Shown here piece by piece: positions 423-64,000 of a stretch of DNA of 64,000 nucleotides. Source of the stretch: Octopus sinensis. Taxonomy: Eukaryota. Each line of letters starts with the position of its first letter. Position 1 is the first letter of the stretch. Made by a program: the position numbers and the translations under genes. Below the pieces are notes generated by a model. The model was not told the DNA's origin, did not search any database, and worked only from the letters and a program-made list of their open reading frames with translations. The DNA is taken from NCBI RefSeq assembly GCF_006345805.1, contig NC_043014.1, positions 37,076,001 to 37,140,000 on the forward strand. Direction: 5' to 3'.

Positions 423-41050
<40,628 letters not shown>

Positions 41051-42915: not shown

Positions 42916-45886
42916 ATGGGTGACGTTATTGGTAAGGTGTTAATTTTCTTAATTTAAACTTAATTTAAACTTTTTATGTAGCAATGGAATTATATGGTTA
43001 GTGTTTTTGGGTGGGCTCTTCTGCTAGTATATGTAATACTGGTTTTATATATGTACGAGGGGCGTTCAATAAGTAATGCCCCTGAGCCACTTCCCATAGC
43101 AGTAGAGCAACGAAACTTGGCACAGTTATTAGTCTTTTTCTACATAGGAACCACCCAGAGTTACGCATTTCTCCCATTGTTTGATGCAGCTCTGGAGACC
43201 GTTTTTGTAGAAGACCCCAGCTTGGTCCTCCAACCTGAACGTGACTTCAGAAATCAAGGCTGCATCATCTCGGAAACGCTTTCCTTTCAAAAACAACTTC
43301 ATGACTGGGAAGAGGCGAAAATCAGAGGGTGCAAGGTCAAGAAAGTAGGGGAATGGGGGAGGAGTTCATAGCCATACGCCTGTGCTTCTGATCTGGCGAC
43401 AAGCGAGTTGTGGACCGGAGCGTTGTCTTGCAGGAGGAGGATGCCTTTGCTGATCTTGCCCCGCCTCTTGATTTTGATAACTTCTCTTAATTTCCTCAAA
43501 AGTGAAGCATGATAGGCTCCTGCAATTGTGGTACCCTTTGCCAAGAAATCTGTCATCACTACTCCGTCCTGGTCCCAGAAGACTGTGAGCATGACCTTGC
43601 CAGCGGAGGGCTGCACCCTTGCCTTCTTTGGAGGAGGGGAGTCACGGTGCTTCCACTGCATTGACTGGGCTTTGGTCTCTGGATCATCGTGATGGACCCA
43701 GGTTTCATCCTGTGTAATCAGTCTTTTGAAAAATTTTGACTCATCTTCTTGGCACATCTCCAAATTCACCCTCGAGCACTCGACGCGTTCTTGCTTCTGG
43801 AAAGGCGTGAGCAACCTGGGAATCCATCTGGCAGACACCTTTTGCATATGCAAATGGTCATGAATGATAGTTTCCACAGACCCGGTACTAATCTTGACCT
43901 CATGGGCTATTGGCGAATAATTATGCGTCGATCTTCCAAAATGGCAGCCTCAACTTGACGGACAGATGCCTCATCAATGGCAGAAGGGACGACCAGATCT
44001 GGGAGCTGTTTCCACAGAGTTCCGACCATGTTTGAATTCACGATGCCAGCGTTTTACAAGGTCATATGATGGGGCATCATCACCATAAGTTACTTTCATT
44101 TCATCAAAAGTCTCCCGTGGTGTGCGTCCTTTCAAATACAAAAACCGGATCACTGCTCGACACTCAACAGGCTCCATTTCACACTTGACTCGGTTCAAAC
44201 ACCTGTAAATCAGAAACCACAATTAATTCAGAGCTGTAATTTGCCACTTACTCTATAGAGATATAAATGATTGCACATGCAAAATTTCAGCTAGATCAAA
44301 CAAACAACTGCAAGTGGGTCAGAGGCATTACTTATTAAACGTCCCTCGTATGTTGATTCGCTAGCCTCTGCACGCATTTTTTTCTCTCCTTGTTTCTTTC
44401 TGTGTTTCTTTTCTGTGTATCTTTCTGTTGAAGAGCATAGGCTCGAAACGTAAAAGACTTGTTTTATTTATATTCCTGAGCGCCATACTAATACAATTGT
44501 TTGTTTGTATTCCACCTGCCTTCGTCTTTTGTTTATTTTCATAAAGCTTCCCGTTATATATATATATATATACGCGAGAAAGAAGCAACAAGAATGGATA
44601 GGTTTTTAGTACGATCGTTTCATACAAGGACAGGTTTTATTAAAAGTTGCAAAGATTACAGCATATAAACGAGTCCCGTACTCATCAGCTAAAATACATG
44701 TAAGTTCTCTAGACATCCTAGTGTTTGAGGCTATACTCATGAAGTAATGTAGATAATTAAACAGATTTCTAAAGTTCATTAAAGTTCTTTAAAGATGATG
44801 TACAGTCTTATCACAGAATTTTAAAAAAGTTTTGATAGCATCACAGAGAAGGTGACCTAATCCATATGAATTTCCATAGATATGATGAGGGATTATATAC
44901 TCACAGAAGACAAATTTATCCATTGTTAATTACAACGAGGTGGGTCTCAATTCCTGCTTATTAGCATTACAGAGAGGGTGAATTTATCTTTGTATATATG
45001 CACAGATTCCAATGGTGTAGATGTAAATTTCCAGAGAAATGGAGATGAATTTCATATTCACAGGCGATAAATTTTACAATGGTTGAACACAATGAGGTAG
45101 GTATCAATCCTTGTTATATGATTAGGTATTTGCCACATTAATCACATTACTGCTATTCACAAGAGGCTGTAGCTACAGCCTCTTGTGAATAGCAGTAATG
45201 TGATTAATGTGGCAAATACCTAATCATATAACAAGGATTGATACCTACCTCATTGTGTTCAACCATTGTAAAATTTATCGCCTGTGAATATGAAATTCAT
45301 CTCCATTTCTCTGGAAATTTACATCTACACCATTGGAATCTGTGCATATATACAAGGATAATTCACCCTCTCTGTAATGCTAATAAGCAGGAATTGAGAC
45401 CCACCTCGTTGTAATTAACAATGGATAAATTTGTCTTCTGTGAGTATATAATCCCTCATCATATCTATGGAAATTCATATGGATTAGGTCACCTTCTCTG
45501 TGATGCTATCAAAACTTTTTTAAAATTCTGTGATAAGACTGTACATCATCTTTAAAGAACTTTAATGAACTTTAGAAATCTGTTTAATTATCTACATTAC
45601 TTCATGAGTATAGCCTCAAACACTAGGATGTCTAGAGAACTTACATGTATTTTAGCTGATGAGTACGGGACTCGTTTATATGCTGTAATCTTTGCAACTT
45701 TTAATAAAACCTGTCCTTGTATGAAACGATCGTACTAAAAACCTATCCATTCTTGTTGCTTCTTTCTCGCTTATAATCACCCCACATTACTGTATTGTTA
45801 AATCAGTATAGTTTTTTTTGGTGCATCTAAGTTAGGTACCATATTCAAGTAAATTTTTCTAAAATTAACTTGAATCTTATTGCTCT

Positions 45887-45930
<44 letters not shown>

Positions 45931-48900: not shown

Positions 48901-51900
48901 CTGCGTCTAAAACTGAGACAACATCCTGTCACTAACCCTAACTTTTTGTTTCTTAATTGTTAAATCAATTTAATTGTTACACGTGTAAAAAAAACCGAAA
49001 GCAGTGGAAAATAATTAAAACAATTAACAAACAAAATAATTCTATAATTTTATACACGCGCTTTCTGTATGTATACGGAAAGCGTGTGTATAAAATTATA
49101 GAATTATTTTGTTTGTTAATTGTTTAAATTATTTTCCATTGCTTTTGTTTTTTTTTACACGTGTAACAATTAAATTGATTTAACAATTAAGAAAAAAAAA
49201 CATTTAGGGTTAGGTTGAGGGTTAGTGACAGGATGTTGTCTCAGTTTTAGACGCAGCAAATGATTTTAGCTCAAAAGAGAGCATAGGATTGGTTAAAATT
49301 TGAAAAATTAAACTATGTTAAACAAACAAATTACAATTTTCTCAAGAAAGCCAAGAGAAAAAAAATGTTTTATTTTGACTCATTCTACCAGTATACGAAG
49401 TTTTAAAGTGTTTAGTTAACTAGAAATTGTCTGCCGTTCAAAAGGAAAAGATCCAACACAAAAACACAAAGTAAATAATTTTTTTAAACAAAATAAATAA
49501 AACACAAAGTAAGGATCGACTAGTCACGACTAGCTAGCGCAGATGTGTGAGTATGAGAGTGCACACACCGAGACCACTCTTCTTAAGTAGTACCCAAGAT
49601 GTGGCACAAAATATGATAACTCAAAAAGAAATGTAATTACAATATAAATGAGCATGCACAAAAAAAATTTTTTTGTTCCAAAATGTTCAATAACAAAATA
49701 TTGATTTGTCCAGTACACATGAGAACGGTATCGAAATTGATCAAGAATGTAGTTGTTTATTACTATTTCCATCACCTTTGAGAAACTGGAATTAGTTATA
49801 GTTGTTGATAAAGTTGTTGTCGTTATGTATCCATAGGTAGGTCCTCTTCAAACAGATCTACAGCATGAAGGCAGTCAGTTGATTGAATAACTTATGCTCT
49901 TTAGATCCATAGCTCAAAATTTACTATGTCCAAACCTAGCTGATTTATAATTCACAGATCCACAGCTCAAGACATACAATGTCTCCATTGCTCTGATCAG
50001 CAATACTGAGTATTCCACCATGCAAGAGTTAATTGTAACCAGGCCGACTGTAGAAAGCAGAGTAACTCACCTAACTTACAGGCAAAATACTTTGGTTAAT
50101 TGTTTTTTTAGTATTAAGAAGAATATCCAACTACAAATAAGAGCTGCTTTAGAAAGTCTGAAGTTTTCAATGTTTATGTAGTTTCATGTTAGGACAATGT
50201 AAAAACTATTACAGTTTTTACATATTGTTGTTGAGCTCATTTTATCAGTTTCTTTCAACTCTTTATTTTTGTTTCTTTCTCTTACCAGGTCGGGATATTG
50301 AAGGTAATACTTATACTCAGTATGATATTTTATATGAGCTTATTCAGGGTGATAGTAGATGGATTAAACAATGTTTTACACAAAATCCACGTTTGGTAAG
50401 CTGCTCCTTTATTGTTTTCCCCTAATGCATCTATTTATTATTTTATTTTTATGATCAGGTTCACTTCCACCACATGGAACATTGGGCAATTGTCTTTTTG
50501 CTATAGCCCTAGAGCAATCAAATCCTTGTGAGTGGATTTAGTAGACAGAAACTGAAAGACACCCATCCCAATATGTATGTGTGTTTGTGGTTTGTATGCA
50601 TATATGTGTGCATGTTTGTATCTGGACAACAGTTGTAAACAAATAGTTGTTAGTGAATCTTACCATATTTGAAGCAGTGTCCTTCATTCCCTATCTTTCA
50701 TCTTTTGACATCTATTGTCCATGCTGACATGGGTTCTTCTTTATAGACCTATACAGCTATCAGGAAACTTGCCACCAAACATGGGCATTTTGAACACAGA
50801 GTGGTGCTTTCTGTCTAGTGGACTTACAAAGGGATAATTCCCTACGAGTTCCAGATGGCCAAACCATTGTTACTAACCTATACTCCAAACAGCTGGAGCA
50901 GATGTATGCCATTGTATGATAGAAATACCTAGCATTGGTTAAACGACAGTGAGCTTTCCTGCAACAAGACAATGCAGGACCTCACACCACTTGAACAAGC
51001 TAGAATAAATTCTAGGAATTAGAGGGAATTGAACTGATTCCACATCCAGCTTACAGTTTGGACCCAGCTCCCTCAGATTTATTACATTTTTTGCTATCCT
51101 GAAAGTGCATTCTGCCATCCTAAATATCTCCTTAGGCAAAGCTATGCTGGACAAATGAATTGTGGCTCTTGTCTATAATTTCAGCTAACAAACTAATTGC
51201 TGATACATGCTGATATCTACCAAGTGATAATAAATCACAATATGCGCAGTGAAGAACAAGAAACAGAATGATAAGACATATATTCATTCTTAATACATTC
51301 TGGCCGATTCCAGTTTCAATATAGAAATCACAGTTGTATTTCATTGTTGAAGAACTCACTGCAAATGAGTGTGTGTTCATAACAAAAAAAATTAAATTGT
51401 AACTAAATTGTCTGCTTGAATTGTACTATCCTACTTACATTGATTTTAAGAGAAGCTATGAATACTCATTAATTATCAGTTTCATAATTAAATAAATAGC
51501 TTCACTAACCTTTTTGAAAGATCAGATCATTATGAAGTTATAATTTTCACAAGTTCAGCTGCTTCATTTTCTATAAAGAAGCTTTCCCCGACTCTCTTTC
51601 TCTTTGTTGTATACCTTCCCTTTGCATCTAATTTATCTCCTACTGTTCTGATCTTTCTTTTAATATTTTTCCTCATTATCTCACACCCTCTCATATTTAG
51701 CAATTTTGACATGCTTTCACTTTAATCTCTGCAGATTCTTCGAAACAGTGTATGTGGTCTAAGTTACCTGTCTATTGCTTGTCGGCTGGGTGACATAGCT
51801 ACAGTGAAATTGCTGATAGAAAACAATGATCAATGCAATGTAAATGCATCTGATAAAAAAGGCTTTACACCGTTACATTATACTGTGCTTGGGTAAGTTT

Positions 51901-54807
51901 AGAAGTATTTAAGATCTCCAGATCTATGTTGTTTCAAAATTGGCTTGAATGAAAGAAAGATTAAATATGCAAAGATGACATAGTAGGAATATGATATGGT
52001 AATATATATTCAACAGGACACATCAATACAGGCATTCATCATCATTATCACCATTATCATTTTCCATGCTAGCACTAGTCAAATGGTTTGACAGGAACTG
52101 GCAAGCCAGAGGAGTGTGCCAAGCCCTACTGACAGCTTTGGTATGGCTTCTGCAGCTGGATGCACTTCCTAACGCCTAACCTGAAGGAGAGGGGCTCACT
52201 GAGGGGCCTGCAAAACTTGAGCTAGCATGAAAACTGAATCAAACAATACATGTAACTCTCACTAAATGTGTTGAGTGCCCTTTTCCCTCATTTGGCCACT
52301 CATATATTATGTCTCTTCTATTTTTTAATTAATATAAACCTTCCACTAGGAGGGAGCCAGTTTCTAACAAAGATACAAGGCTCCATCTCTGGGATGTAGT
52401 TAACACAGACAAATTCACATTTGGAACTTGAGAGAAGTCTTGCATATTTTTATTGTTCCACTCACAGATTGCACCTGTAATGTACGAATTAGCTGGTTGA
52501 TTTCCCTTTCTGAAAATCCCAGTTTATCTAGATTCTCCTATAAGCATTTACTAACAAAACCTAGTGCTCCAATTATTATTGGTATGAATATGAATTCATA
52601 GTCTGGATATAGAAGCTGGGGGTTTCGAAGCAGTTGTCCATAGATATCCTCTTTTTCTTTGATTTTCAAAGAGATATTTATATCTGCAGAGCAGCTGACC
52701 TCTATGATGGTATTTACCTTTACCCCTCTGTCCCAAACAACAATGTACAGCCTGTTATGTTTATATTTGACAGCTGTTTGATGGGAATATTCCACTAGTA
52801 TTCCTTGAATTGGTGTTTATGAATATACTCCATAACAGAGGGATTTTTAAAGTTTATTTCAGGACAGTCTTTTTTGTGGATGGCATAGTATATTGTTTGA
52901 GCAATAACATAGTGCCACATAGGAAGGTAGCACTGTGACGACATTTTAGGACAGCTGCTAATAACATGTGTGATGTCTTCTACAGAAACATTTACATAGC
53001 CTACACATATGGTTGCACCTTGGGATTACAAGAACGTCACTGTTTTTCTTGTTCACCAGGTACTTTGTGGCAACATACATGCATGGGTGGAAAATAAAAC
53101 ACACATTTAGATCAGTCAAATATGCTTGGGACATATCTAATCTGTAGTAAAGAATTTTCACTGCAGTTTGCAGTAGCAAAATATTTTCTGAAAATGTTAA
53201 CCAACACATACCCTTATTATAAGTACGTTGACAATAAAAAGCTCACACGCACATACTAATCAAAAGTTATGTCCCTTGTTTTGGAAACTTCATAAGCAAC
53301 ATGCCTATTTATACATTTAATTCCAAATAGATTAACACATGTCCCTTACTTGTAATGGAAGAATCACCTAAAGCTATGATGAGCTGAATGACAGCACAAA
53401 CCTGATCTCAGTCAGTTAAATGTAATTTTTCTTCTATTATAAAATAAATCTCTTATGCAAAAATTTAATCACTGAGACTTTTTTCACACAGAAAACTTGA
53501 ATTAAAATGTGATTTTTTTCCTCTCTCTCAAACCCACCACATGAATACACAAACTAATATGTTTTCAGTAAAACTATTACATGAAACATGGGCTGTGACT
53601 GCAGAAGACATATGAAAGCTTGAAAGAAATGAAGCTAATATGTTTTGCTGGATATGCAATGTCAGTAAGCACATATGACAGAGTGTAAGCATCTTGAGGG
53701 AAAAATTGGGCATAAGAGGCATCAGATGTGCAGGAGAGAAGATTGCACTGGTATGGTCATGTGATGCATATGGACGGGGATAGTCGTGTAAAGAAGTGCT
53801 GATTTCTAACTATGGAGGGATCCTGTGGAAGAGGTAGACCTAGAAAGACAGCGATGGTGTTGAGTGACTTAGAATGTCCTCAACACCACCATTCTTTCCT
53901 CTAAGTTTTTTAGTCATTGCTTGGGTGGGATGATTTCCCACTCTTACGCAGTGTTCAATTTCTTTGCCATGCTTTGAAGAAAAAGTTCAGGAAACAGTTC
54001 AAAACAACAAAAGTCCAAACAAAGTCAAAAAACACTTTGAAGGAAGACAAAAAGAGCAGAAAGACAAAGAAGAGAAAATGAAAGAAGGAAGACTGTTCAA
54101 AACATGGAAACACACAATTCCGGCCAACCGGTACTCCTGGCCAAAAGGTACTCCAAAGGTACTCCAAAAGTGAACAGGGACACAGCAGCAGGAACAGAAT
54201 TTCAAAAAAATCCACCACAAACTGGTAAAAATTCAAAAAATTCAAAACTTCACAATTTTTGGAGGCGGGATACGTCCTCAAAACAGCACTCTTCTCACAT
54301 CTAAGTGAGACACTTAGCGCAACTATAGGCAGACAAATGCCTTGGAATCCAGTGGGGATTTCTTGTTAAAGAAAAATGAACAAACCTCTACTGAATCCCA
54401 AAAAACAAATGTCTTACCTTATAGTCACGCCTTCTCAGTTCTTCAGTGCAAGACTGCGGCAAAGCAACGTCTTAACAACACCAGTGCAAAAGTAGAACTA
54501 ACTAACTATATAGTTTTATTCTTTTACTTGTCTCAGTCATTTGGCTCTGGTCATGCTGGAGCTCTACTTTGAAGGGTTTTAGTTGAACAAATGGTAATGG
54601 GGGAAAAAACACAGACACACACACACACACTCTTCTTTCCGTTTCTGTCTACCAAATCCACTCACAAGGCTTCGGTCAGCTTGAGACTATAGTAGAAGAC
54701 ACTTGCCCAAAGTGTTACATAGTGAAACTAAACCCAGAACCGTGTAGTTGGTCAGCAAGCTTCTTACCACATAGCCACACCTGCACCTATATATATATAT
54801 GTGTATA

Positions 54808-54839
<32 letters not shown>

Positions 54840-55081
54840 CACTCACACACACTATAGAATCCTGTAAATCTATATTTAATCTCATTGTCTTTGACTTATA
54901 TATTTTTACAATTTCTGTAACTTTCAGCAACCATCTTGAGGTGATGAGCTTAATGCTGAACTATGGGGCTAATGTCAATATACAAAATGATGAAGGTCAT
55001 AGTCCACTATGTCTGGCCATTATTATGAACTATATAAATCTGGTTAAGCCGTTACTTGAAGCTGCAAGAGACAGTGTTAAG
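42916..55081 (+). CDS. Ankyrin-repeat protein, first 4 exons (42916-42931, 50289-50395, 51735-51892, 54928-55081); 145 codons, 3' part not in window
   Basis: GT-AG exons with phases 1, 0, 2, 0. Product contains LSIACRLGDIATVKLLIE, VNASDKKGFTPLHYTVLGNHLEVMSLMLNYGANVNIQNDEGHSPLCLAIIMNYINLVKPLL (three ankyrin-type repeats). Exon 1 (ATG GGT GAC GTT ATT G|gtaagg) is the least certain. Ortholog not recognised. Confidence 0.8.
43056..44348 (-). mobile_element. Full-length mariner element (1293 bp)
   Basis: TA TSD on both sides; TIRs CGAGGG(G/A)CGTT(C/T)AATAAGTAATGCC. Confidence 0.95.
43129..44177 (-). pseudogene. Frameshifted mariner transposase
   Basis: HTH region MEPVECRAVIRFL, WIPRLL, ITQDETW, LLLQDNAPVH, broken YSPDL; at least three frameshifts. 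Confidence 0.92.
44420..44457 (+). ncRNA. Minimal type I hammerhead-like motif
   Basis: UCUUU CUGUUGA A GAGC-AUAG-GCUC GAAA CG UA AAAGA; core deviates (A6U, extra A). Confidence 0.55.
44604..44694 (-). ncRNA. Mirror copy of the same hammerhead on the left arm
   Basis: Reverse complement of 45650-45740. Confidence 0.72.
45650..45740 (+). ncRNA. Type I hammerhead ribozyme candidate with extended helix II
   Basis: Helix I UUUUAG/CUAAAA; CUGAUGA (45656-62); helix II GUAC-GGGAC/GUCCU-U-GUAU; GAAA (45723-26); palindromic helix III ACGAUCGU; GUA cleavage triplet (after 45734). Confidence 0.75.
46288..46670 (+). mobile_element. Non-autonomous Helitron (383 bp)
   Basis: Inserted between A and T; 5' TCTCTCTATATATAA; 3' GCAACGCCGGGCGATACTG-CTAG; no TSD. 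Confidence 0.72.
48532..49594. mobile_element. MULE-like non-autonomous element (outer)
   Basis: 9-bp TSD CAAGATGTG (48523-48531, 49595-49603); about 85-bp TIRs (G)GTACTACTTAAGAAGAGTGGTC. Confidence 0.75.
48688..49454. mobile_element. Fold-back MITE nested in the outer MULE-like element
   Basis: 8-bp TSD AACACAAA; TIR GGATCTTTTCCTTT(C/T)GAACGGCAG; arms extend to a centre near 49071. Confidence 0.82.
50954..51095 (+). pseudogene. Old mariner transposase remnant (duplicated near 61229-61370)
   Basis: LQQDNAGPH and ELIPHPAYSLDPAPSD fragments. Confidence 0.6.
52490..53215 (-). mobile_element. Decayed RLE-type (R2/R4/NeSL-like) non-LTR retrotransposon 3' fragment; duplicated near 62765-63490
   Basis: CRLCK zinc-finger start and HNRLYIVVWD...IIEVSC(S/P)ADINI...K.K...Y...IPIIIGALG, a restriction-like endonuclease signature. 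Confidence 0.75.
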
Positions 55082-56734
55082 GTGAGTCAATATATATTAT
55101 CATCATCATCCTCATATGTCTACTTTCTCTGCTGGCATGCATTGAATGGGTTGACTGACTGGAACAGCTCTGAGAAACTCATACCTCCTAACATAAAACA
55201 CTTTAATGAGCACATTGTTTCCAGGTACCATCACTGTAAAGGTTGCTGTACCCTTGACAAGGCAAGTGAACCTGCTTAACCCTGCATTCTCACTGCTTCA
55301 TTTGACAACTATACAGAACATAGGTCTGTTAAGAACCCTTGAATTTCTAAGGTCAGATCTTAACCCAGTTTCTTTGGCATATAGGTGTCTAACATCACAA
55401 TACAGTTCATCCCTGTATGGGATGCTGGTCTGTTGCATGGTTAACTTACCAACTATAGCTGGAGCTAAGTGGTGTGGAGCAGCATGAAATGAAGTGTTTT
55501 GCTCAAGAATGCAACATATGCATGGTTTGGAAATTGAAACCACAATCTTACAATTGTGTGTGTAACACACTCACCACTTGGCCATGAACCTTCTCTGTGC
55601 AGAATGCACTCAATACTTTTGTGTAGCACTACCACAAGGGTGGTTATTTTGTAAGGGAGAGTTAAACAAAGGGAGAGTAATGACTTCATGTGGAATAGGG
55701 AGAGAAATTGAAGTATGATGTGAGGAAGAGATTTGTCGTTATGAGAAGATGGTAGCGGGTAGAGTAACAGAGGGGACGGTGCAAGTAGGTTGTATTGGAA
55801 AAAGCAGACAAAAGGGAAAGGAAAAAGAGTTTAGTCTGGCATACGTACATACTTGTGCTCACCTTAAAATATGTATGTATCTAAATTTTGTACGACTCTT
55901 ACTCTGTCTATTAGTCCCCCTTTTATTATTTTTTTTTACTTGCTCCTCCTCTTTCTCATATTTCTTGGCCCTCTCTTTCTTTAACTCCCACTATTTCCCA
56001 CTCATTTATCTCCCCTGTACCTTTCTCTTTTTTTTTCTAATTCTTCAATCCCACTGCCTTCCAGTGCAATTGTTACCAGCATTGCCTTACTGGCACCTGT
56101 GACTGGTGTTCAGCCAGCCACAATCTTTCCTTTTTGGTCTGATTGCTGACCACCAACACCCCTTATGTCCATCTCCTATGTTCCTGCCTTTAGGCTTTCA
56201 CTTCATACACGCCAGCTCATTTGGATTTGTTCTCAGTTGAAAGACACCTGTTGTTATTTTCTTGCTGTTTGTATTCGTAATTGTGTACCATGTTTTCCGT
56301 TTTTTGTCTTTTTGTGAACCATATTCTCCGTCTTTTGTTGCTGTACATGTTTGCTAGCTTTTTTACAAAGGGATCTAATGCTCTTAGTTTAGACTTTTTT
56401 GGGGGCAACCAGATCAAACCATCTCAAGTGTAACTGCCCAAAATCGTTGTGACTTCTGGTACTTGACTGAAGAAAGAAGGCCACGAATGACCCATCTTTT
56501 TTGGCCTGTCTTTCTAATTGTTGTTTCTCTCGTCTGCCTCTTTGTATCGTCTATCTGTCCGAATGTTTTATTGTCCTCTACTCATTCCTTGGCAATACCT
56601 AGCCATATATACATATATGTGTGTGTGTGTGTTATGCAAATAAGAAGATAATATTTTTTCAAATGCAGAATTGCTGTTAGAACAACAGAAATACTGTGTA
56701 AATTACCCTCACAACACAGAAAAAATTGTCAACA

Positions 56735-60670: not shown

Positions 60671-62009
60671 GTAAGCTGCTCCTTTATTGTTTTCCCCTAA
60701 TGCATCTATTTATTATTTTATTTTTATGATCAGGTTCACTTCCACCACATGGAACATTGGGCAATTGTCTTTTTGCTATAGCCCTAGAGCAATCAAATCC
60801 TTGTGAGTGGATTTAGTAGACAGAAACTGAAAGACACCCATCCCAATATGTATGTGTGTTTGTGGTTTGTATGCATATATGTGTGCATGTTTGTATCTGG
60901 ACAACAGTTGTAAACAAATAGTTGTTAGTGAATCTTACCATATTTGAAGCAGTGTCCTTCATTCCCTATCTTTCATCTTTTGACATCTATTGTCCATGCT
61001 GACATGGGTTCTTCTTTATAGACCTATACAGCTATCAGGAAACTTGCCACCAAACATGGGCATTTTGAACACAGAGTGGTGCTTTCTGTCTAGTGGACTT
61101 ACAAAGGGATAATTCCCTACGAGTTCCAGATGGCCAAACCATTGTTACTAACCTATACTCCAAACAGCTGGAGCAGATGTATGCCATTGTATGATAGAAA
61201 TACCTAGCATTGGTTAAACGACAGTGAGCTTTCCTGCAACAAGACAATGCAGGACCTCACACCACTTGAACAAGCTAGAATAAATTCTAGGAATTAGAGG
61301 GAATTGAACTGATTCCACATCCAGCTTACAGTTTGGACCCAGCTCCCTCAGATTTATTACATTTTTTGCTATCCTGAAAGTGCATTCTGCCATCCTAAAT
61401 ATCTCCTTAGGCAAAGCTATGCTGGACAAATGAATTGTGGCTCTTGTCTATAATTTCAGCTAACAAACTAATTGCTGATACATGCTGATATCTACCAAGT
61501 GATAATAAATCACAATATGCGCAGTGAAGAACAAGAAACAGAATGATAAGACATATATTCATTCTTAATACATTCTGGCCGATTCCAGTTTCAATATAGA
61601 AATCACAGTTGTATTTCATTGTTGAAGAACTCACTGCAAATGAGTGTGTGTTCATAACAAAAAAAATTAAATTGTAACTAAATTGTCTGCTTGAATTGTA
61701 CTATCCTACTTACATTGATTTTAAGAGAAGCTATGAATACTCATTAATTATCAGTTTCATAATTAAATAAATAGCTTCACTAACCTTTTTGAAAGATCAG
61801 ATCATTATGAAGTTATAATTTTCACAAGTTCAGCTGCTTCATTTTCTATAAAGAAGCTTTCCCCGACTCTCTTTCTCTTTGTTGTATACCTTCCCTTTGC
61901 ATCTAATTTATCTCCTACTGTTCTGATCTTTCTTTTAATATTTTTCCTCATTATCTCACACCCTCTCATATTTAGCAATTTTGACATGCTTTCACTTTAA
62001 TCTCTGCAG

Positions 62010-62167
62010 ATTCTTCGAAACAGTGTATGTGGTCTAAGTTACCTGTCTATTGCTTGTCGGCTGGGTGACATAGCTACAGTGAAATTGCTGATAGAAAACA
62101 ATGATCAATGCAATGTAAATGCATCTGATAAAAAAGGCTTTACACCGTTACATTATACTGTGCTTGG
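62010..62167 (+). CDS. Duplicate of ankyrin-gene exon 3
   Basis: Identical to 51735-51892 (offset 10275). Confidence 0.6.
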
Positions 62168-64000
62168 GTAAGTTTAGAAGTATTTAAGATCTCCAGATCT
62201 ATGTTGTTTCAAAATTGGCTTGAATGAAAGAAAGATTAAATATGCAAAGATGACATAGTAGGAATATGATATGGTAATATATATTCAACAGGACACATCA
62301 ATACAGGCATTCATCATCATTATCACCATTATCATTTTCCATGCTAGCACTAGTCAAATGGTTTGACAGGAACTGGCAAGCCAGAGGAGTGTGCCAAGCC
62401 CTACTGTCAGCTTTGGTATGGCTTCTGCAGCTGGATGCACTTCCTAACGCCTAACCTGAAGGAGAGGGGCTCACTGAGAGGCCTGCAAAACTTGAGCTAG
62501 CATGAAAACTGAATCAAATAATACATGTAACTCTCACTAAATGTGTTGAGTGCCCTTTTCCCTCATTTGGCCACTCATATATTGTCTCTTCTATTTTTTA
62601 ATTAATATAAACCTTCCACTAGGAGGGAGCCAGTTTCTAACAAAGATACAAGGTTCCATCTCTGGGATGTAGTTAACACAGACAAATTCACATTTGGAAC
62701 TTGAGAGAAGTCTTGCATATTTTTATTGTTCCACTCACAGATTGCACCTGTAATGTACGAATTAGCTGGTTGATTTCCCTTTCTGAAAATCCCAGTTTAT
62801 CTAGATTCTCCTATAAGCATTTACTAACAAAACCTAGTGCTCCAATTATTATTGGTATGAATATGAATTCATAGTCTGGATATAGAAGCTGGGGGTTTCG
62901 AAGCAGTTGTCCATATATATACTCTTTTTCTTTGATTTTCAAAGAGATATTTATATCTGCAGGGCAGCTGACCTCTATGATGGTACTTACCTTTACCCCT
63001 CTGTCCCAAACAACAATGTACAGCCTGTTATGTTTATATTTGACAGCTGTTTGATGGGAATATTCCACTAGTATTCCTTGAATTGGTGTTTATGAATATA
63101 CTCCATAACAGAGGGATTTTTAAAGTTTATTTCAGGACAGTCTTTTTTGTGGATGGCATAGTATATTGTTTGAGCAATAACATAGTGTCACATAGGGGGG
63201 TAGCACTGTGACAACATTTTAGGACAGCTGCTAATCACATGTGTGATGTCTTCTACAGAAACATTTACATAGCCTACACATATGGTTGCACCTTGGGATT
63301 ACAAGAACGTCACTGTTTTTCTTGTTCACCAGGTACTTTGTGGCAACATACATGCATGGGTGGAAAATAAAACACACATTTAGATCAGTCAAATATGCTT
63401 GGGACATATCTAATCTGTAGTAAAGAATTTTCACTGCAGTTTGCAGTAGCAAAATATTTTCTGAAAATGTTAACCAACACATACCCTTATTATAAGTCCG
63501 TTGACAATGAAAAGCTCACACGCACATACTAATCAAAAGTTATGTCCCTTGTTTTGGAAATGTCATAAGCAACATGCCTATTTATACATTTAATTCCAAA
63601 TAGATTAACACATGTCCCTTACTTTTAATGAAAGAATCACCTAAAGCTATGATGAGCTGAATGACAGCACAAACCTGATCTCAGTCAGTTAAATGTAATT
63701 TTTCTTCTATTATAAAATAAATCTCTTATGCAAAAATTTAATCACTGAGACTTTTTTCACACAGAAAACTTGAATTAAAATGTGATTTTTTTCCTCTCTC
63801 TCAAACCCACCACATGAATACACAAACTAATATGTTTTCAGTAAAACTATTACATGAAACATGGGCTGTGACTGCAGAAGACATATGAAAGCTTGAAAGA
63901 AATGAAGCTAATATGTTTTGCTGGATATGCAATGTCAGTAAGCACATATGACAGAGTGTAAGCATCTTGAGGGAAAAATTGGGCATAAGAGGCATCAGAT

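What the first reader, a model, noticed from the sequence alone, without database searches (positions are those of the whole stretch)
45650..45740. A hammerhead ribozyme family with a branched, extended helix II, supported by covariation at three loci
Seen: three diverged loci (45650-45740 +, 36891-36976 -, 14368-14455 +) keep CUGA-N-GA with N = U, A, G (the variable position 7) and a downstream GAAA...UA about 60 nt later. Helix I changes compensatorily: UUUUAG/CUAAAA versus AUGCAG/CUGCGU. Helix III is a palindrome that also covaries: ACGAUCGU, ACAAUUGU, AUGAUCGU. Helix II pairs as UACG/UGUA versus UACU/AGUA, and loop II holds a conserved side hairpin (GCUGUAA/UUGCAGC, AUGUAA/UUGCAU). Established: Penelope-like elements carry type I hammerheads whose short palindromic helix III lets them cleave as dimers; those are usually minimal. 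Inference: this is a cephalopod hammerhead subtype with a large branched domain II. The cleanest copy (45650) would cleave after A45734 and is sense to the ankyrin-gene intron. I cannot tell whether it is already catalogued.
Basis: partly seen in the sequence, partly recalled or inferred. Interest (0 to 1): 0.9.

Follow-up and report, generated by a model that had tools for sequence, protein, structure and literature searches.

The report
Penelope-retrotransposon hammerhead with long helix II
The three loci are real type I hammerhead ribozyme motifs, but they are the expected terminal-repeat ribozymes of a very abundant Penelope-like retrotransposon, and their large domain II is one long unbranched hairpin, not a branched domain.

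Summary
The three loci carry CUGANGA, about 60 nt, then GAAA, a palindromic helix III and UA. Genome-wide the motif occurs 11,324 times against 128 for a reversed-pattern control. Helix I (6 bp) and helix II covary strongly across about 45 sub-families (covariation 0.535 against 0.20 shuffled, 0 of 500 shuffles as high).

The motif lies in the pseudo-LTR of a 4.55-kb Penelope-like element (PLE). It sits 210 nt upstream of, and 1.45 kb downstream of, an RT plus GIY-YIG ORF. That ORF has the RWK, DKT and CxCX5C signatures published for the 'Hydra' PLE clade, and the element inserts in (TA)n. Hammerheads in PLE pseudo-LTRs, their palindromic helix III and action as dimers are already published.

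The 'branched' claim fails: 85 of 92 copies fold domain II as a single hairpin of about 20 bp, and a single-rod model is supported by covariation. The 'side hairpin' is its tip. The helix III 'covariation' can be explained by CpG decay. The same genome holds 6,169 copies with a short helix II, so the long form is one end of a range. Verdict: a real, ordinary PLE hammerhead with an unusually long helix II. Cleavage is untested. Interest is modest.

The parts
45649..45741 (+). Hammerhead copy 1, youngest sub-family. Helix I 5' strand 45650-45655; core CUGAUGA 45656-45662; domain II 45663-45722; GAAA 45723-45726; palindrome CGAUCG 45727-45732; U16.1 and A17 45733-45734; predicted cut 45734|45735; helix I 3' strand 45735-45740.
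   Evidence: model R1 78.9 bits, E 6e-16; at least 58 identical copies among the fetched loci
44603..44695 (-). Identical inverted hammerhead copy in the left arm of the palindrome.
44574..45889 (.). One PLE insertion made only of untranslated 3' sequence. An inverted 5'-truncated arm (44574-45172) is joined head-to-head to a direct arm (45173 to about 45889). The inverted arm stops at the position equivalent to 45770; the direct arm runs about 120 nt further.
   Evidence: 12 of 30 other genomic copies have the same arrangement, with variable inner breakpoints and the same outer end.
44555..44572 (.). (TA)n microsatellite flanking the insertion on the left
45890..45929 (.). (TA)n microsatellite flanking the insertion on the right
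36889..36978 (-). Hammerhead copy 2. N7 = A; U-U at 10.1/11.1; helix III CAAUUG; mismatch at 1.1/2.1.
   Evidence: R1 67.9 bits
37092..37180 (+). Mirror copy of copy 2, with GAAA shortened to GAA (core broken)
   Evidence: R1 60.1 bits
36859..37308 (.). Second PLE insertion with the same inverted-plus-direct architecture (palindrome 36854-37215, centre about 37035), flanked by (TA)n. End coordinates are approximate.
14367..14456 (+). Hammerhead copy 3. N7 = G; U-U at 10.1/11.1; helix I AUGCAG/CUGCGU; helix III UGAUCG.
   Evidence: R1 83 bits, E 6e-17
14199..14698 (+). Solitary 5'-truncated PLE fragment holding copy 3, lying between (TA)n(TG)n and (TA)n. Its ends were not checked against other copies.
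30617..30709 (-). Possible old, decayed copy with a mutated core. Weak.
   Evidence: R1 17.7 bits, E 0.11

Best explanation
These are type I hammerhead ribozyme motifs carried in the pseudo-LTR of a C-terminal-endonuclease Penelope-like retrotransposon with the signatures of the 'Hydra' clade. The element is very abundant and recently active in this genome.

Shown:
- The RNA has the canonical hammerhead core.
- Helix I is open and 6 bp long.
- Helix III is two base pairs plus a GAUC loop, and is part of the 8-nt palindrome ACGAUCGU.
- Helix II is unusually long: a single interrupted rod of about 20 bp (45-75 nt) ending in a conserved UGUAA-NNN-UUGCA hairpin.

Inferred:
- A lone copy folds poorly into the active form. 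Two copies pair through the palindrome into a double hammerhead, and each cuts after H17 (A45734|C45735 in the cleanest copy).
- This trims tandem or read-through PLE transcripts to unit length, probably slowly and perhaps with help from the element's own protein, as reported for a lizard PLE.

The window copies are 5'-truncated insertions into (TA)n. Two of them have the inverted-plus-direct arrangement typical of PLE integration.
For: Core and frequency:
- The core and spacing are exact at five places in the window.
- Genome-wide there are 11,324 hits against 128 for the control.

Helix I:
- Positions 1-6 are paired in 72-95% of 92 unique copies, and position 7 in 20%.
- There are 47 distinct strand combinations, many fully compensatory: UUUUAG/CUAAAA, AUGCAG/CUGCAU, UUUCGG/CCGAGA, ACUCUA/UAGAGU, AUUACA/UGUAAU.

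Pair counts on 76 distinct sequences:
- 82.5% of cells are paired, against 64.2% shuffled and 28-46% in slid registers.
- The covariation score is 0.535 against 0.20, with 0 of 500 shuffles as high.
- All 11 pairs of helix I and basal helix II change on both sides.

Single-rod helix II on 43 full-length copies:
- 84.8% of cells are paired, against 74.6% shuffled.
- The covariation score is 0.362 against 0.193, with 0 of 500 shuffles as high.
- 85 of 92 copies fold domain II as one hairpin, median 20 bp.

PLE context:
- Tandem copies have a hammerhead, then 210 nt, then an ORF of about 930 aa, then 1.45 kb, then the next hammerhead. The unit is 4,553 bp.
- The ORF has RWK, DKT, FDI..Y, YRDD, CxCX5C and GIY..YIG..R..H..E..N. 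These residues are invariant among homologues.
- This matches the Hydra-clade description, including (TA)n targeting and the presence of hammerheads (PMC8557442).
- PLE hammerheads with a palindromic helix III, an enlarged helix II, opposite-strand pairs 100-700 bp apart and dimer activity are published (PMC4209133; PMC6765202).

Energetics:
- The hammerhead-competent monomer is -9.8 kcal/mol, against -14.5 for the monomer minimum, which pairs core UGAU with the helix III palindrome.
- The double-hammerhead dimer is -34.4, against -29.0 for two free monomers.
Against: - No cleavage data exist for these sequences.
- No Rfam hammerhead model matches, even at E <= 10.
- The consensus G10.1-C11.1 pair is replaced by G-U (locus 1) or U-U (loci 2 and 3; 29 of 61 basal combinations).
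- There is no recognisable loop-loop tertiary contact, so intrinsic activity may be very low.
- Published PLE hammerheads cleave poorly in vitro. In one PLE, catalytic mutants still inserted normally (PMC11167929).
- Genomic copies retain sequence downstream of the cut site, so uncleaved RNA was the template for these insertions.
- The copies analysed were selected by a pattern that fixes the core and helix III. Conservation of those parts was therefore not independently tested.
- The sequences are related transposon sub-families, which inflates shuffle-based significance.
Confidence: 0.8

Rival explanations
1. The motif is of hammerhead origin but no longer works as a ribozyme in these families. 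On this reading the long helix II rod, together with the conserved downstream block CCAUUCUUGUUGCUU, is kept as a structured 3' element that the PLE reverse transcriptase recognises to start target-primed reverse transcription. The core survives by descent, or because the protein contacts it.
For: - U-U or G-U replaces G10.1-C11.1 in most families.
- Insertions carry 36-155 nt beyond the cut site, with two fixed ends. This fits the internal initiation described for a lizard PLE, where hammerhead mutants did not affect insertion (PMC11167929).
- The downstream block is conserved across diverged loci.
- Naiad PLEs thrive without hammerheads (PMC8557442).
Against: - The complete 15-nt core, a helix I of exactly 6 bp and the palindrome are kept across dozens of sub-families whose helices have turned over completely. 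That is hard to explain without selection on the hammerhead fold.
- U10.1-U11.1 is a documented tolerated variant in active natural hammerheads (PMC3088659; PMC7229834).
Confidence: 0.15
2. One reading: a distinct cephalopod hammerhead subtype whose domain II is a branched multi-helix junction with a side hairpin, supported by covariation in all three helices at three independent loci.
For: - Domain II is indeed large, and its central hairpin is conserved with one compensatory pair (column 38-53: AU 14, CG 9, UA 6).
- Rfam models miss it.
Against: - Only 7 of 92 copies give a two-hairpin minimum-energy fold, and most of those look like chance hits or decayed copies.
- The stretches flanking the 'side hairpin' pair with each other and covary (columns 20-28 with 63-72), which gives one coaxial rod.
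- The loci are copies of one transposon superfamily.
- The helix III changes fit CpG decay.
- Helix II length ranges from 16 to 75 nt within this genome.
Confidence: 0.04
3. The signal is an artefact. The motif matches arise by chance in AT-rich DNA, and the perfect palindromes are fold-back assembly errors.
For: - The arms of the 1.2-kb palindrome are about 100% identical with no spacer. Long-read chimeras can produce this.
- The window is AT-rich.
Against: - The enrichment over the reversed-pattern control is 88-fold.
- The helices covary.
- 12 of 30 independent genomic copies show the same inverted-plus-direct arrangement, with different inner breakpoints but the same outer end.
- This arrangement is described for PLEs (PMC8557442).
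Confidence: 0.01

Closest known systems
Hammerhead ribozymes of Penelope-like elements ('min-HHRs'; Cervera & de la Pena 2014, PMC4209133; Lunse, Weinberg & Breaker 2017)
   Same: - Type I topology and location in the pseudo-LTRs flanking an RT-EN ORF.
- Helix III of 1-2 bp with a palindromic loop, implying action as a dimer.
- Helix II larger than usual, and no loop-loop tertiary motif.
- Thousands of heterogeneous copies per genome that group into covarying consensus families.
- Pairs on opposite strands 100-700 bp apart.
   Different: - Helix II here is about 20 bp (45-75 nt), against the reported 6-8 bp.
- Helix I is a full 6 bp rather than 2-5 bp.
- G10.1-C11.1, reported as highly conserved there, is mostly U-U or G-U here.
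- The 'extra nucleotide between 9 and 10.1' is not clearly present.
'Hydra' clade of C-terminal-endonuclease PLEs (Craig et al. 2021, PMC8557442)
   Same: - RWK motif, and DKT in place of DKG.
- CxCX5C linker.
- GIY-YIG without CCHH, with CxxC and CxH around the conserved E and N.
- Insertion into (TA)n.
- Hammerheads present, and molluscs among the hosts.
   Different: - The unit is 4.55 kb with an ORF of about 930-950 aa, against 'generally <3 kb'. The excess is an Asn-rich low-complexity insert and a 1.45-kb 3' UTR.
- Phylogenetic placement was not computed here.
- The paper calls the clade's hammerheads 'canonical'. Whether its octopus families were included is unknown, because the supplement was not available.
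Rfam Hammerhead_1 (RF00163), classical metazoan type I hammerheads of satellite DNA and non-LTR retrozymes (newt, Schistosoma, mussel, axolotl; PMC7229834)
   Same: - Same core and the same type I topology.
- A weak palindromic helix III that favours dimers.
- A U-U mismatch at the base of helix II is also seen in axolotl HHR_Amex2.
   Different: - Those have a 4-bp helix II whose loop contacts loop 1, and they sit in 170-400-nt tandem repeats that yield circular RNAs.
- These have a long rod-like helix II and lie in a 4.55-kb autonomous element.
- RF00163 does not score them. It finds only 7 other sites over its cut-off among the 74 candidates scored in this genome.

Membership tests
Hammerhead ribozyme, type I | Conserved core C3-U4-G5-A6-N7-G8-A9, G12-A13-A14, A15.1-U16.1, and H17 at the cut site | tested here: met
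   Exact in copies 45649-45741, 44603-44695, 36889-36978 and 14367-14456. The copy at 37092-37180 lacks one A of GAAA.
Hammerhead ribozyme, type I | Three helices radiate from the core, with helix I open-ended, and are supported by compensatory changes | tested here: met
   All helix I pairs (6 of 6) and all basal helix II pairs (5 of 5) change on both sides. 82.5% of cells are paired, against 28-46% in slid registers. Helix III was fixed by the search pattern, so it is uninformative.
Hammerhead ribozyme, type I | Closing pair 10.1-11.1 of helix II. It is G-C in the consensus, so this is a typical feature and not a strict one. | tested here: inconclusive
   G-U in locus 1 and U-U in loci 2 and 3. 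Across 61 basal combinations: U-U 29, G-C 10, G-U 10. U-U is a documented tolerated natural variant (PMC3088659; PMC7229834).
Hammerhead ribozyme, type I | Match to the curated Rfam hammerhead covariance models | tested here: not met
   No hit at gathering score in the window, and none at E <= 10 around locus 1. This is expected from the 60-nt helix II and the 2-bp helix III. It is a limit of detection, not a defining property.
Hammerhead ribozyme, type I | Site-specific self-cleavage 3' of H17, giving 2',3'-cyclic phosphate and 5'-OH ends | not testable with these tools
   Energetics only. The active monomer fold is 4.7 kcal/mol above the minimum. The double-hammerhead dimer is 5.4 kcal/mol below two free monomers.
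PLE-associated hammerhead | Lies in the pseudo-LTRs on both sides of an RT + GIY-YIG ORF | tested here: met
   L031: hammerhead at 1591, ORF 1879-4672 (tblastn with P0001), next hammerhead at 6144, unit 4,553 bp. L032 is arranged the same way. L048, L050 and L051 have the hammerhead 210 nt upstream of the ATG.
PLE-associated hammerhead | Very short helix III with a palindromic sequence that allows an intermolecular helix (dimer) | tested here: met
   ACGAUCGU and ACAAUUGU are 8-nt palindromes. The dimer model is -34.4 kcal/mol. The genome-wide sample was selected for YRWTYR, so the frequency of the palindrome was not tested.
PLE-associated hammerhead | Minimal size: helix II of about 6-8 bp | tested here: not met
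   Domain II is 45-75 nt with a median of 20 bp. The same genome also has 6,169 copies with 8-38 nt. Size is descriptive and not defining.
Hydra-clade Penelope-like element | RWK motif; DKT instead of DKG; CxCX5C linker; C-terminal GIY-YIG lacking CCHH | tested here: met
   P0001 has ..RRIRWKT....PADKTGN....VCKCRIKSKC.. and VIY..YIG..R..H. These residues are invariant or nearly so in 11 homologues. The criteria come from PMC8557442.
Hydra-clade Penelope-like element | Insertion into (TA)n, with complex tandem or inverted insertions | tested here: met
   (TA)n lies on both sides of all three window insertions. 12 of 30 genomic copies have an inverted arm.
Hydra-clade Penelope-like element | RT groups with the Hydra clade in a phylogeny, and RT and GIY-YIG folds are recognisable | not tested
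   No reference PLE set was at hand. Pfam and a profile search of PDB sequences gave nothing, so the assignment rests on motifs.

The most novel reading that the evidence does not exclude
The long helix II rod may be a functional module and not neutral expansion. It might serve as the docking site for the element's RT-EN protein, making this a protein-gated hammerhead. It might also present the AAUAAA/AUUAAA in its 3' strand, coupling ribozyme cleavage with 3'-end formation. Either would define a regulated hammerhead subclass specific to these PLEs.
Probability: 0.1. Interest if true: 0.6.

Novelty: new variant of a known kind. Interest (0 to 1): 0.3.

Why it matters
The result gives about 11,000 copies, in dozens of covarying sub-families, of a PLE hammerhead whose helix II is three to five times the usual length, and which the current Rfam models miss.

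Practical uses:
- Improving hammerhead and PLE annotation in cephalopod genomes.
- A natural series of helix II lengths (16-75 nt) in one genome, which could show how helix II length affects dimer-dependent or protein-assisted cleavage.

It does not change the picture of what PLE hammerheads are.

The head-to-head insertions also place perfect inverted repeats of 0.2-0.6 kb per arm in what may be introns. If transcribed they would form long double-stranded RNA. That may matter in animals with heavy A-to-I editing, but it was not examined here.

Tried and rejected
- Rfam at gathering score and in E-value mode gave no hammerhead. The only 'significant' hits, plant MIR families at 36931-37139, are artefacts of the palindrome.
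- The first pattern used a 20-50 nt gap and found nothing, because the gap is about 60 nt.
- I first read the 4.55-kb spacing of direct copies as a segmental duplication without an ORF. tblastn later showed a decayed PLE ORF between them.
- Pfam on the ORF and on its homologues gave no RT or GIY-YIG hit. A profile search against PDB sequences also gave nothing useful.
- RNAalifold on a MAFFT alignment of 62 copies gave almost no structure (-1.0), because indels misalign the mid-helix. I used core-anchored fixed-length extracts and a hand-set structure instead.
- The branched model of domain II was rejected.
- The supplement of PMC8557442, which lists Hydra-clade hammerheads, and the Lunse et al. 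paper were not available. I therefore could not check whether these octopus families are already listed.
After that, sequences came only from the 80-character print-outs of pattern searches, joined from both strands.
- No squid or other octopus genome was reachable.
- A regex for ankyrin consensus found nothing. ORF listing plus Pfam then found one Ank exon.
Full report
**1. What is in the sequence**

Locus 1 is UUUUAG-CUGAUGA-[60 nt]-GAAA-CGAUCG-UA|CUAAAA at 45650-45740(+). Loci 2 (36891-36976, -) and 3 (14368-14455, +) have N7 = A and G.

A pattern for the motif, CTGANGA-N45-75-GAAAYRWTYRTA, finds four exact copies in the window against 0.00 expected. The fourth is at 44610-44688(-).

A covariance model built later finds a fifth copy at 37092-37180(+), in which GAAA has lost one A. 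It also gives a weak sixth candidate at 30617-30709(-).

No Rfam family reaches its gathering score in the window. No hammerhead model matches around locus 1 even at E <= 10.

**2. The loci are transposon copies**

The three loci align well beyond the ribozyme, including a conserved downstream block CCATTCTTGTTGCTT.

Locus 1 is the right arm of a near-perfect palindrome, 44569-45775, centred at 45172/45173. Locus 2 lies in a palindrome at 36854-37215.

The window is part of a 2.72-Gb assembly. There, a 201-nt stretch around locus 1 has at least 40 copies at 100% identity and 996 first-look candidates.

Copies are 5'-truncated at variable points. They end about 155 nt after the hammerhead and are followed by (TA)n. 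In 12 of 30 loci an inverted arm precedes the direct copy, and that arm always stops at the same element position, equivalent to window position 45770.

Extending upstream shows an ORF. In tandem copies the order is hammerhead, 210 nt, ORF of about 930 aa, 1.45 kb, next hammerhead. The unit is 4,553 bp.

The ORF has these motifs, which are invariant or nearly so in 11 homologues:
- RWK
- DKT
- FDI..Y
- YRDD
- a CxCX5C linker
- a C-terminal GIY..YIG..R..H..E..N

These signatures, together with (TA)n targeting, the inverted and tandem insertions and the presence of hammerheads, are what Craig et al. 2021 give for the 'Hydra' clade of Penelope-like elements. That clade includes mollusc hosts (PMC8557442). 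Pfam and a profile search of PDB sequences were silent. The clade assignment therefore rests on motifs and not on a phylogeny.

**3. Is it a hammerhead, and is it more than chance?**

Genome-wide the long-helix-II pattern occurs 5,594 + 5,730 times. The same pattern read backwards occurs 66 + 62 times.

I rebuilt 100 genomic copies with 7-nt flanks by joining the print-outs of the pattern search and its reverse complement. With the window copies this gave 92 unique sequences.

*Helix I.* It was not constrained by the search. Positions 1-6 are paired in 95, 92, 88, 82, 72 and 80% of sequences, and position 7 in 20%. There are 47 different strand combinations. A mean of 4.6 of 6 positions pair, against 3.05 ± 0.15 when partners are shuffled.

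*Basal helix II.* It was also unconstrained. Positions 10.2-10.4 are paired in 77-90% of cases, with several pair types at each position.

*Pair counts on 76 distinct core-anchored extracts.*
- 82.5% of cells are paired, against 64.2% shuffled and 28-46% in slid registers.
- The covariation score is 0.535 against 0.20, with 0 of 500 shuffles as high.
- All 11 pairs of helices I and II change on both sides.

*Caveats.*
- The core and helix III were fixed by the search pattern, so their conservation was not tested.
- The sequences are related sub-families, which inflates shuffle statistics. The slid-register control does not suffer from this.

**4. Domain II is a rod, not a branch**

RNAfold gives one interrupted hairpin for all three window loci and for 85 of 92 unique copies. 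The median is 20 bp and the median z-score is -2.05.

I tested a single-rod model on 43 alignable full-length copies. It has 13 pairs from the core outwards, a 7 x 7 internal loop, and an 8-bp apical hairpin UGUAA-NNN-UUGCA. Results:
- 84.8% of cells are paired, against 74.6% shuffled and 28-52% slid.
- The covariation score is 0.362 against 0.193, with 0 of 500 shuffles as high.

Examples of pair types in the rod:

| Columns | Pair types (counts) |
|---|---|
| 20-72 | CG 26, GC 7, GU 4 |
| 21-71 | UA 16, GC 14, AU 5 |
| 26-65 | UA 28, CG 8 |
| 38-53 | AU 14, CG 9, UA 6 |

The same genome has 6,169 copies with only 8-38 nt between the core strands, against 145 for the control. An example is CUGAAGA-UUGUC-GAUCAA-GACAA-GAAACGAUUGUA. 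Other families have perfect stems of 11-12 bp. Helix II length therefore varies across a range among PLE families in this genome.

**5. Departures from the consensus**

The 10.1-11.1 pair is G-U in locus 1 and U-U in loci 2 and 3. Across 61 basal combinations it is U-U in 29, G-C in 10 and G-U in 10. U10.1-U11.1 occurs in active natural hammerheads and in axolotl HHR_Amex2 (PMC3088659; PMC7229834). This weakens the case for activity but does not exclude it.

The helix III variants are:

| Variant | Copies |
|---|---|
| CGATCG | 42 |
| CAATTG | 16 |
| CGATTG | 16 |
| CAATCG | 9 |

Loss of both CpGs of a palindrome yields another palindrome, and both single-loss intermediates are common.

**6. 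Likely mechanism**

Published work places hammerheads in PLE pseudo-LTRs. It attributes to them a helix III too short for monomer activity, cleavage as dimers, and low activity in vitro (PMC4209133; PMC6765202). In one lizard PLE the cleavage was protein-assisted and was dispensable for insertion in vitro (PMC11167929).

For locus 1 the energies are as follows:

| Fold | Energy (kcal/mol) |
|---|---|
| Monomer minimum (core U4-N7 paired with the helix III palindrome) | -14.5 |
| Hammerhead-competent monomer | -9.8 |
| Double hammerhead (8-bp intermolecular helix III, intermolecular helices I) | -34.4 |
| Two free monomers | -29.0 |

I infer the following. Two copies, in tandem or on separate transcripts, pair through ACGAUCGU. 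Each then cuts after A17, which trims PLE transcripts to unit length.

The genomic copies keep 36-155 nt beyond the cut site. The RNAs that were reverse-transcribed were therefore uncut, as in the lizard element.

The inverted-plus-direct insertions fit the reported ability of PLE proteins to cleave and extend both target strands.

**7. Comparison and novelty**

In kind, this is the known PLE hammerhead in a known PLE clade. It differs in three ways:
- a very long rod-like helix II
- a full 6-bp helix I
- frequent loss of G10.1-C11.1

Rfam misses it. I could not check whether these octopus families are already listed in the Hydra-clade supplement or in Repbase.

I rate it a new variant of a known kind, with modest interest.

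An ankyrin-repeat exon lies on the + strand at about 54.9-55.1 kb (Pfam Ank, E = 1e-7). Intron status at 45.6 kb was not shown. Because of the palindrome, any host transcript would carry one sense and one antisense copy.

Noticed in passing
window 44569-45775 and 36854-37215: These are head-to-head palindromes with arms of about 600 nt and about 180 nt at 98-100% identity. If transcribed within a host intron they would fold into long perfect double-stranded RNA, a possible ADAR or RNAi substrate in a cephalopod. They are also the kind of structure that can upset assemblies.
   Followed up: partly
window 45704-45712 (UUUAAUAAA) and the equivalent positions in other copies: The 3' strand of helix II carries a conserved AAUAAA (families of loci 1 and 2) or AUUAAA (family of locus 3 and the GUACGAG family), about 25-30 nt upstream of the hammerhead cut site. 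It could be a polyadenylation signal, or only AT-rich shared ancestry. More distant families lack it.
   Followed up: no
window 45744-45770, 36859-36884(-), 14465-14490: The block CCATTCTTGTTGCTT(C/A)TTT just 3' of the hammerhead is conserved among diverged sub-families. The short 'tail' of inverted arms always ends right after it, at the position equivalent to 45770. It may be the internal start site for reverse transcription.
   Followed up: partly
window 36931-37139: Rfam in E-value mode reports plant microRNA families here (MIR2670, MIR8007, MIR2606, mir-559), with E as low as 1e-14 but below their gathering scores. They are false positives caused by the PLE palindrome.
   Followed up: yes
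window 43299-43949 (-): An open frame of 216 aa matches mariner-type Transposase_1 (Pfam E = 4.5e-23). It lies about 600 nt to the left of the PLE insertion.
   Followed up: partly
window 5150-6361 (-) and 32246-32725 (+): Other retroelement remains are present. One is a 403-aa frame with a CCHC zinc knuckle ([15 protein letters not shown]). The other is a 159-aa frame that looks like part of a reverse transcriptase. Neither was scanned against Pfam or compared with the PLE.
   Followed up: no
window 51132-53242 and 61407-63515, with a run of N near 60.09-60.2 kb: Three open frames recur almost identically about 10,273 nt apart, next to an assembly gap. This is either a tandem segmental duplication or a duplicated haplotype at a gap.
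   Followed up: no
window about 54923-55082 (+); protein P0023: An ankyrin-repeat exon lies on the + strand. Separately, an NCBI Octopus sinensis model named 'putative ankyrin repeat protein RBE_0319' is 68% identical to the PLE ORF over 22% of the ORF's length. That gene model has probably absorbed a PLE fragment. It also hints that the assembly is an Octopus species.
   Followed up: partly
ORF P0001 (L049:511-3300), residues about 500-800: Between the RT and the endonuclease lies a low-complexity insert of about 250 aa, very rich in asparagine. It is absent from the homologues of about 700 aa found in other data sets and explains most of the extra length of this element.
   Followed up: no
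L035 (G000:C5:69319000-69328999), first 4.2 kb in element orientation: Next to one PLE copy lies a 559-bp satellite arranged in both tandem and inverted arrays at 98-99% identity. It is unrelated to the hammerhead.
   Followed up: no
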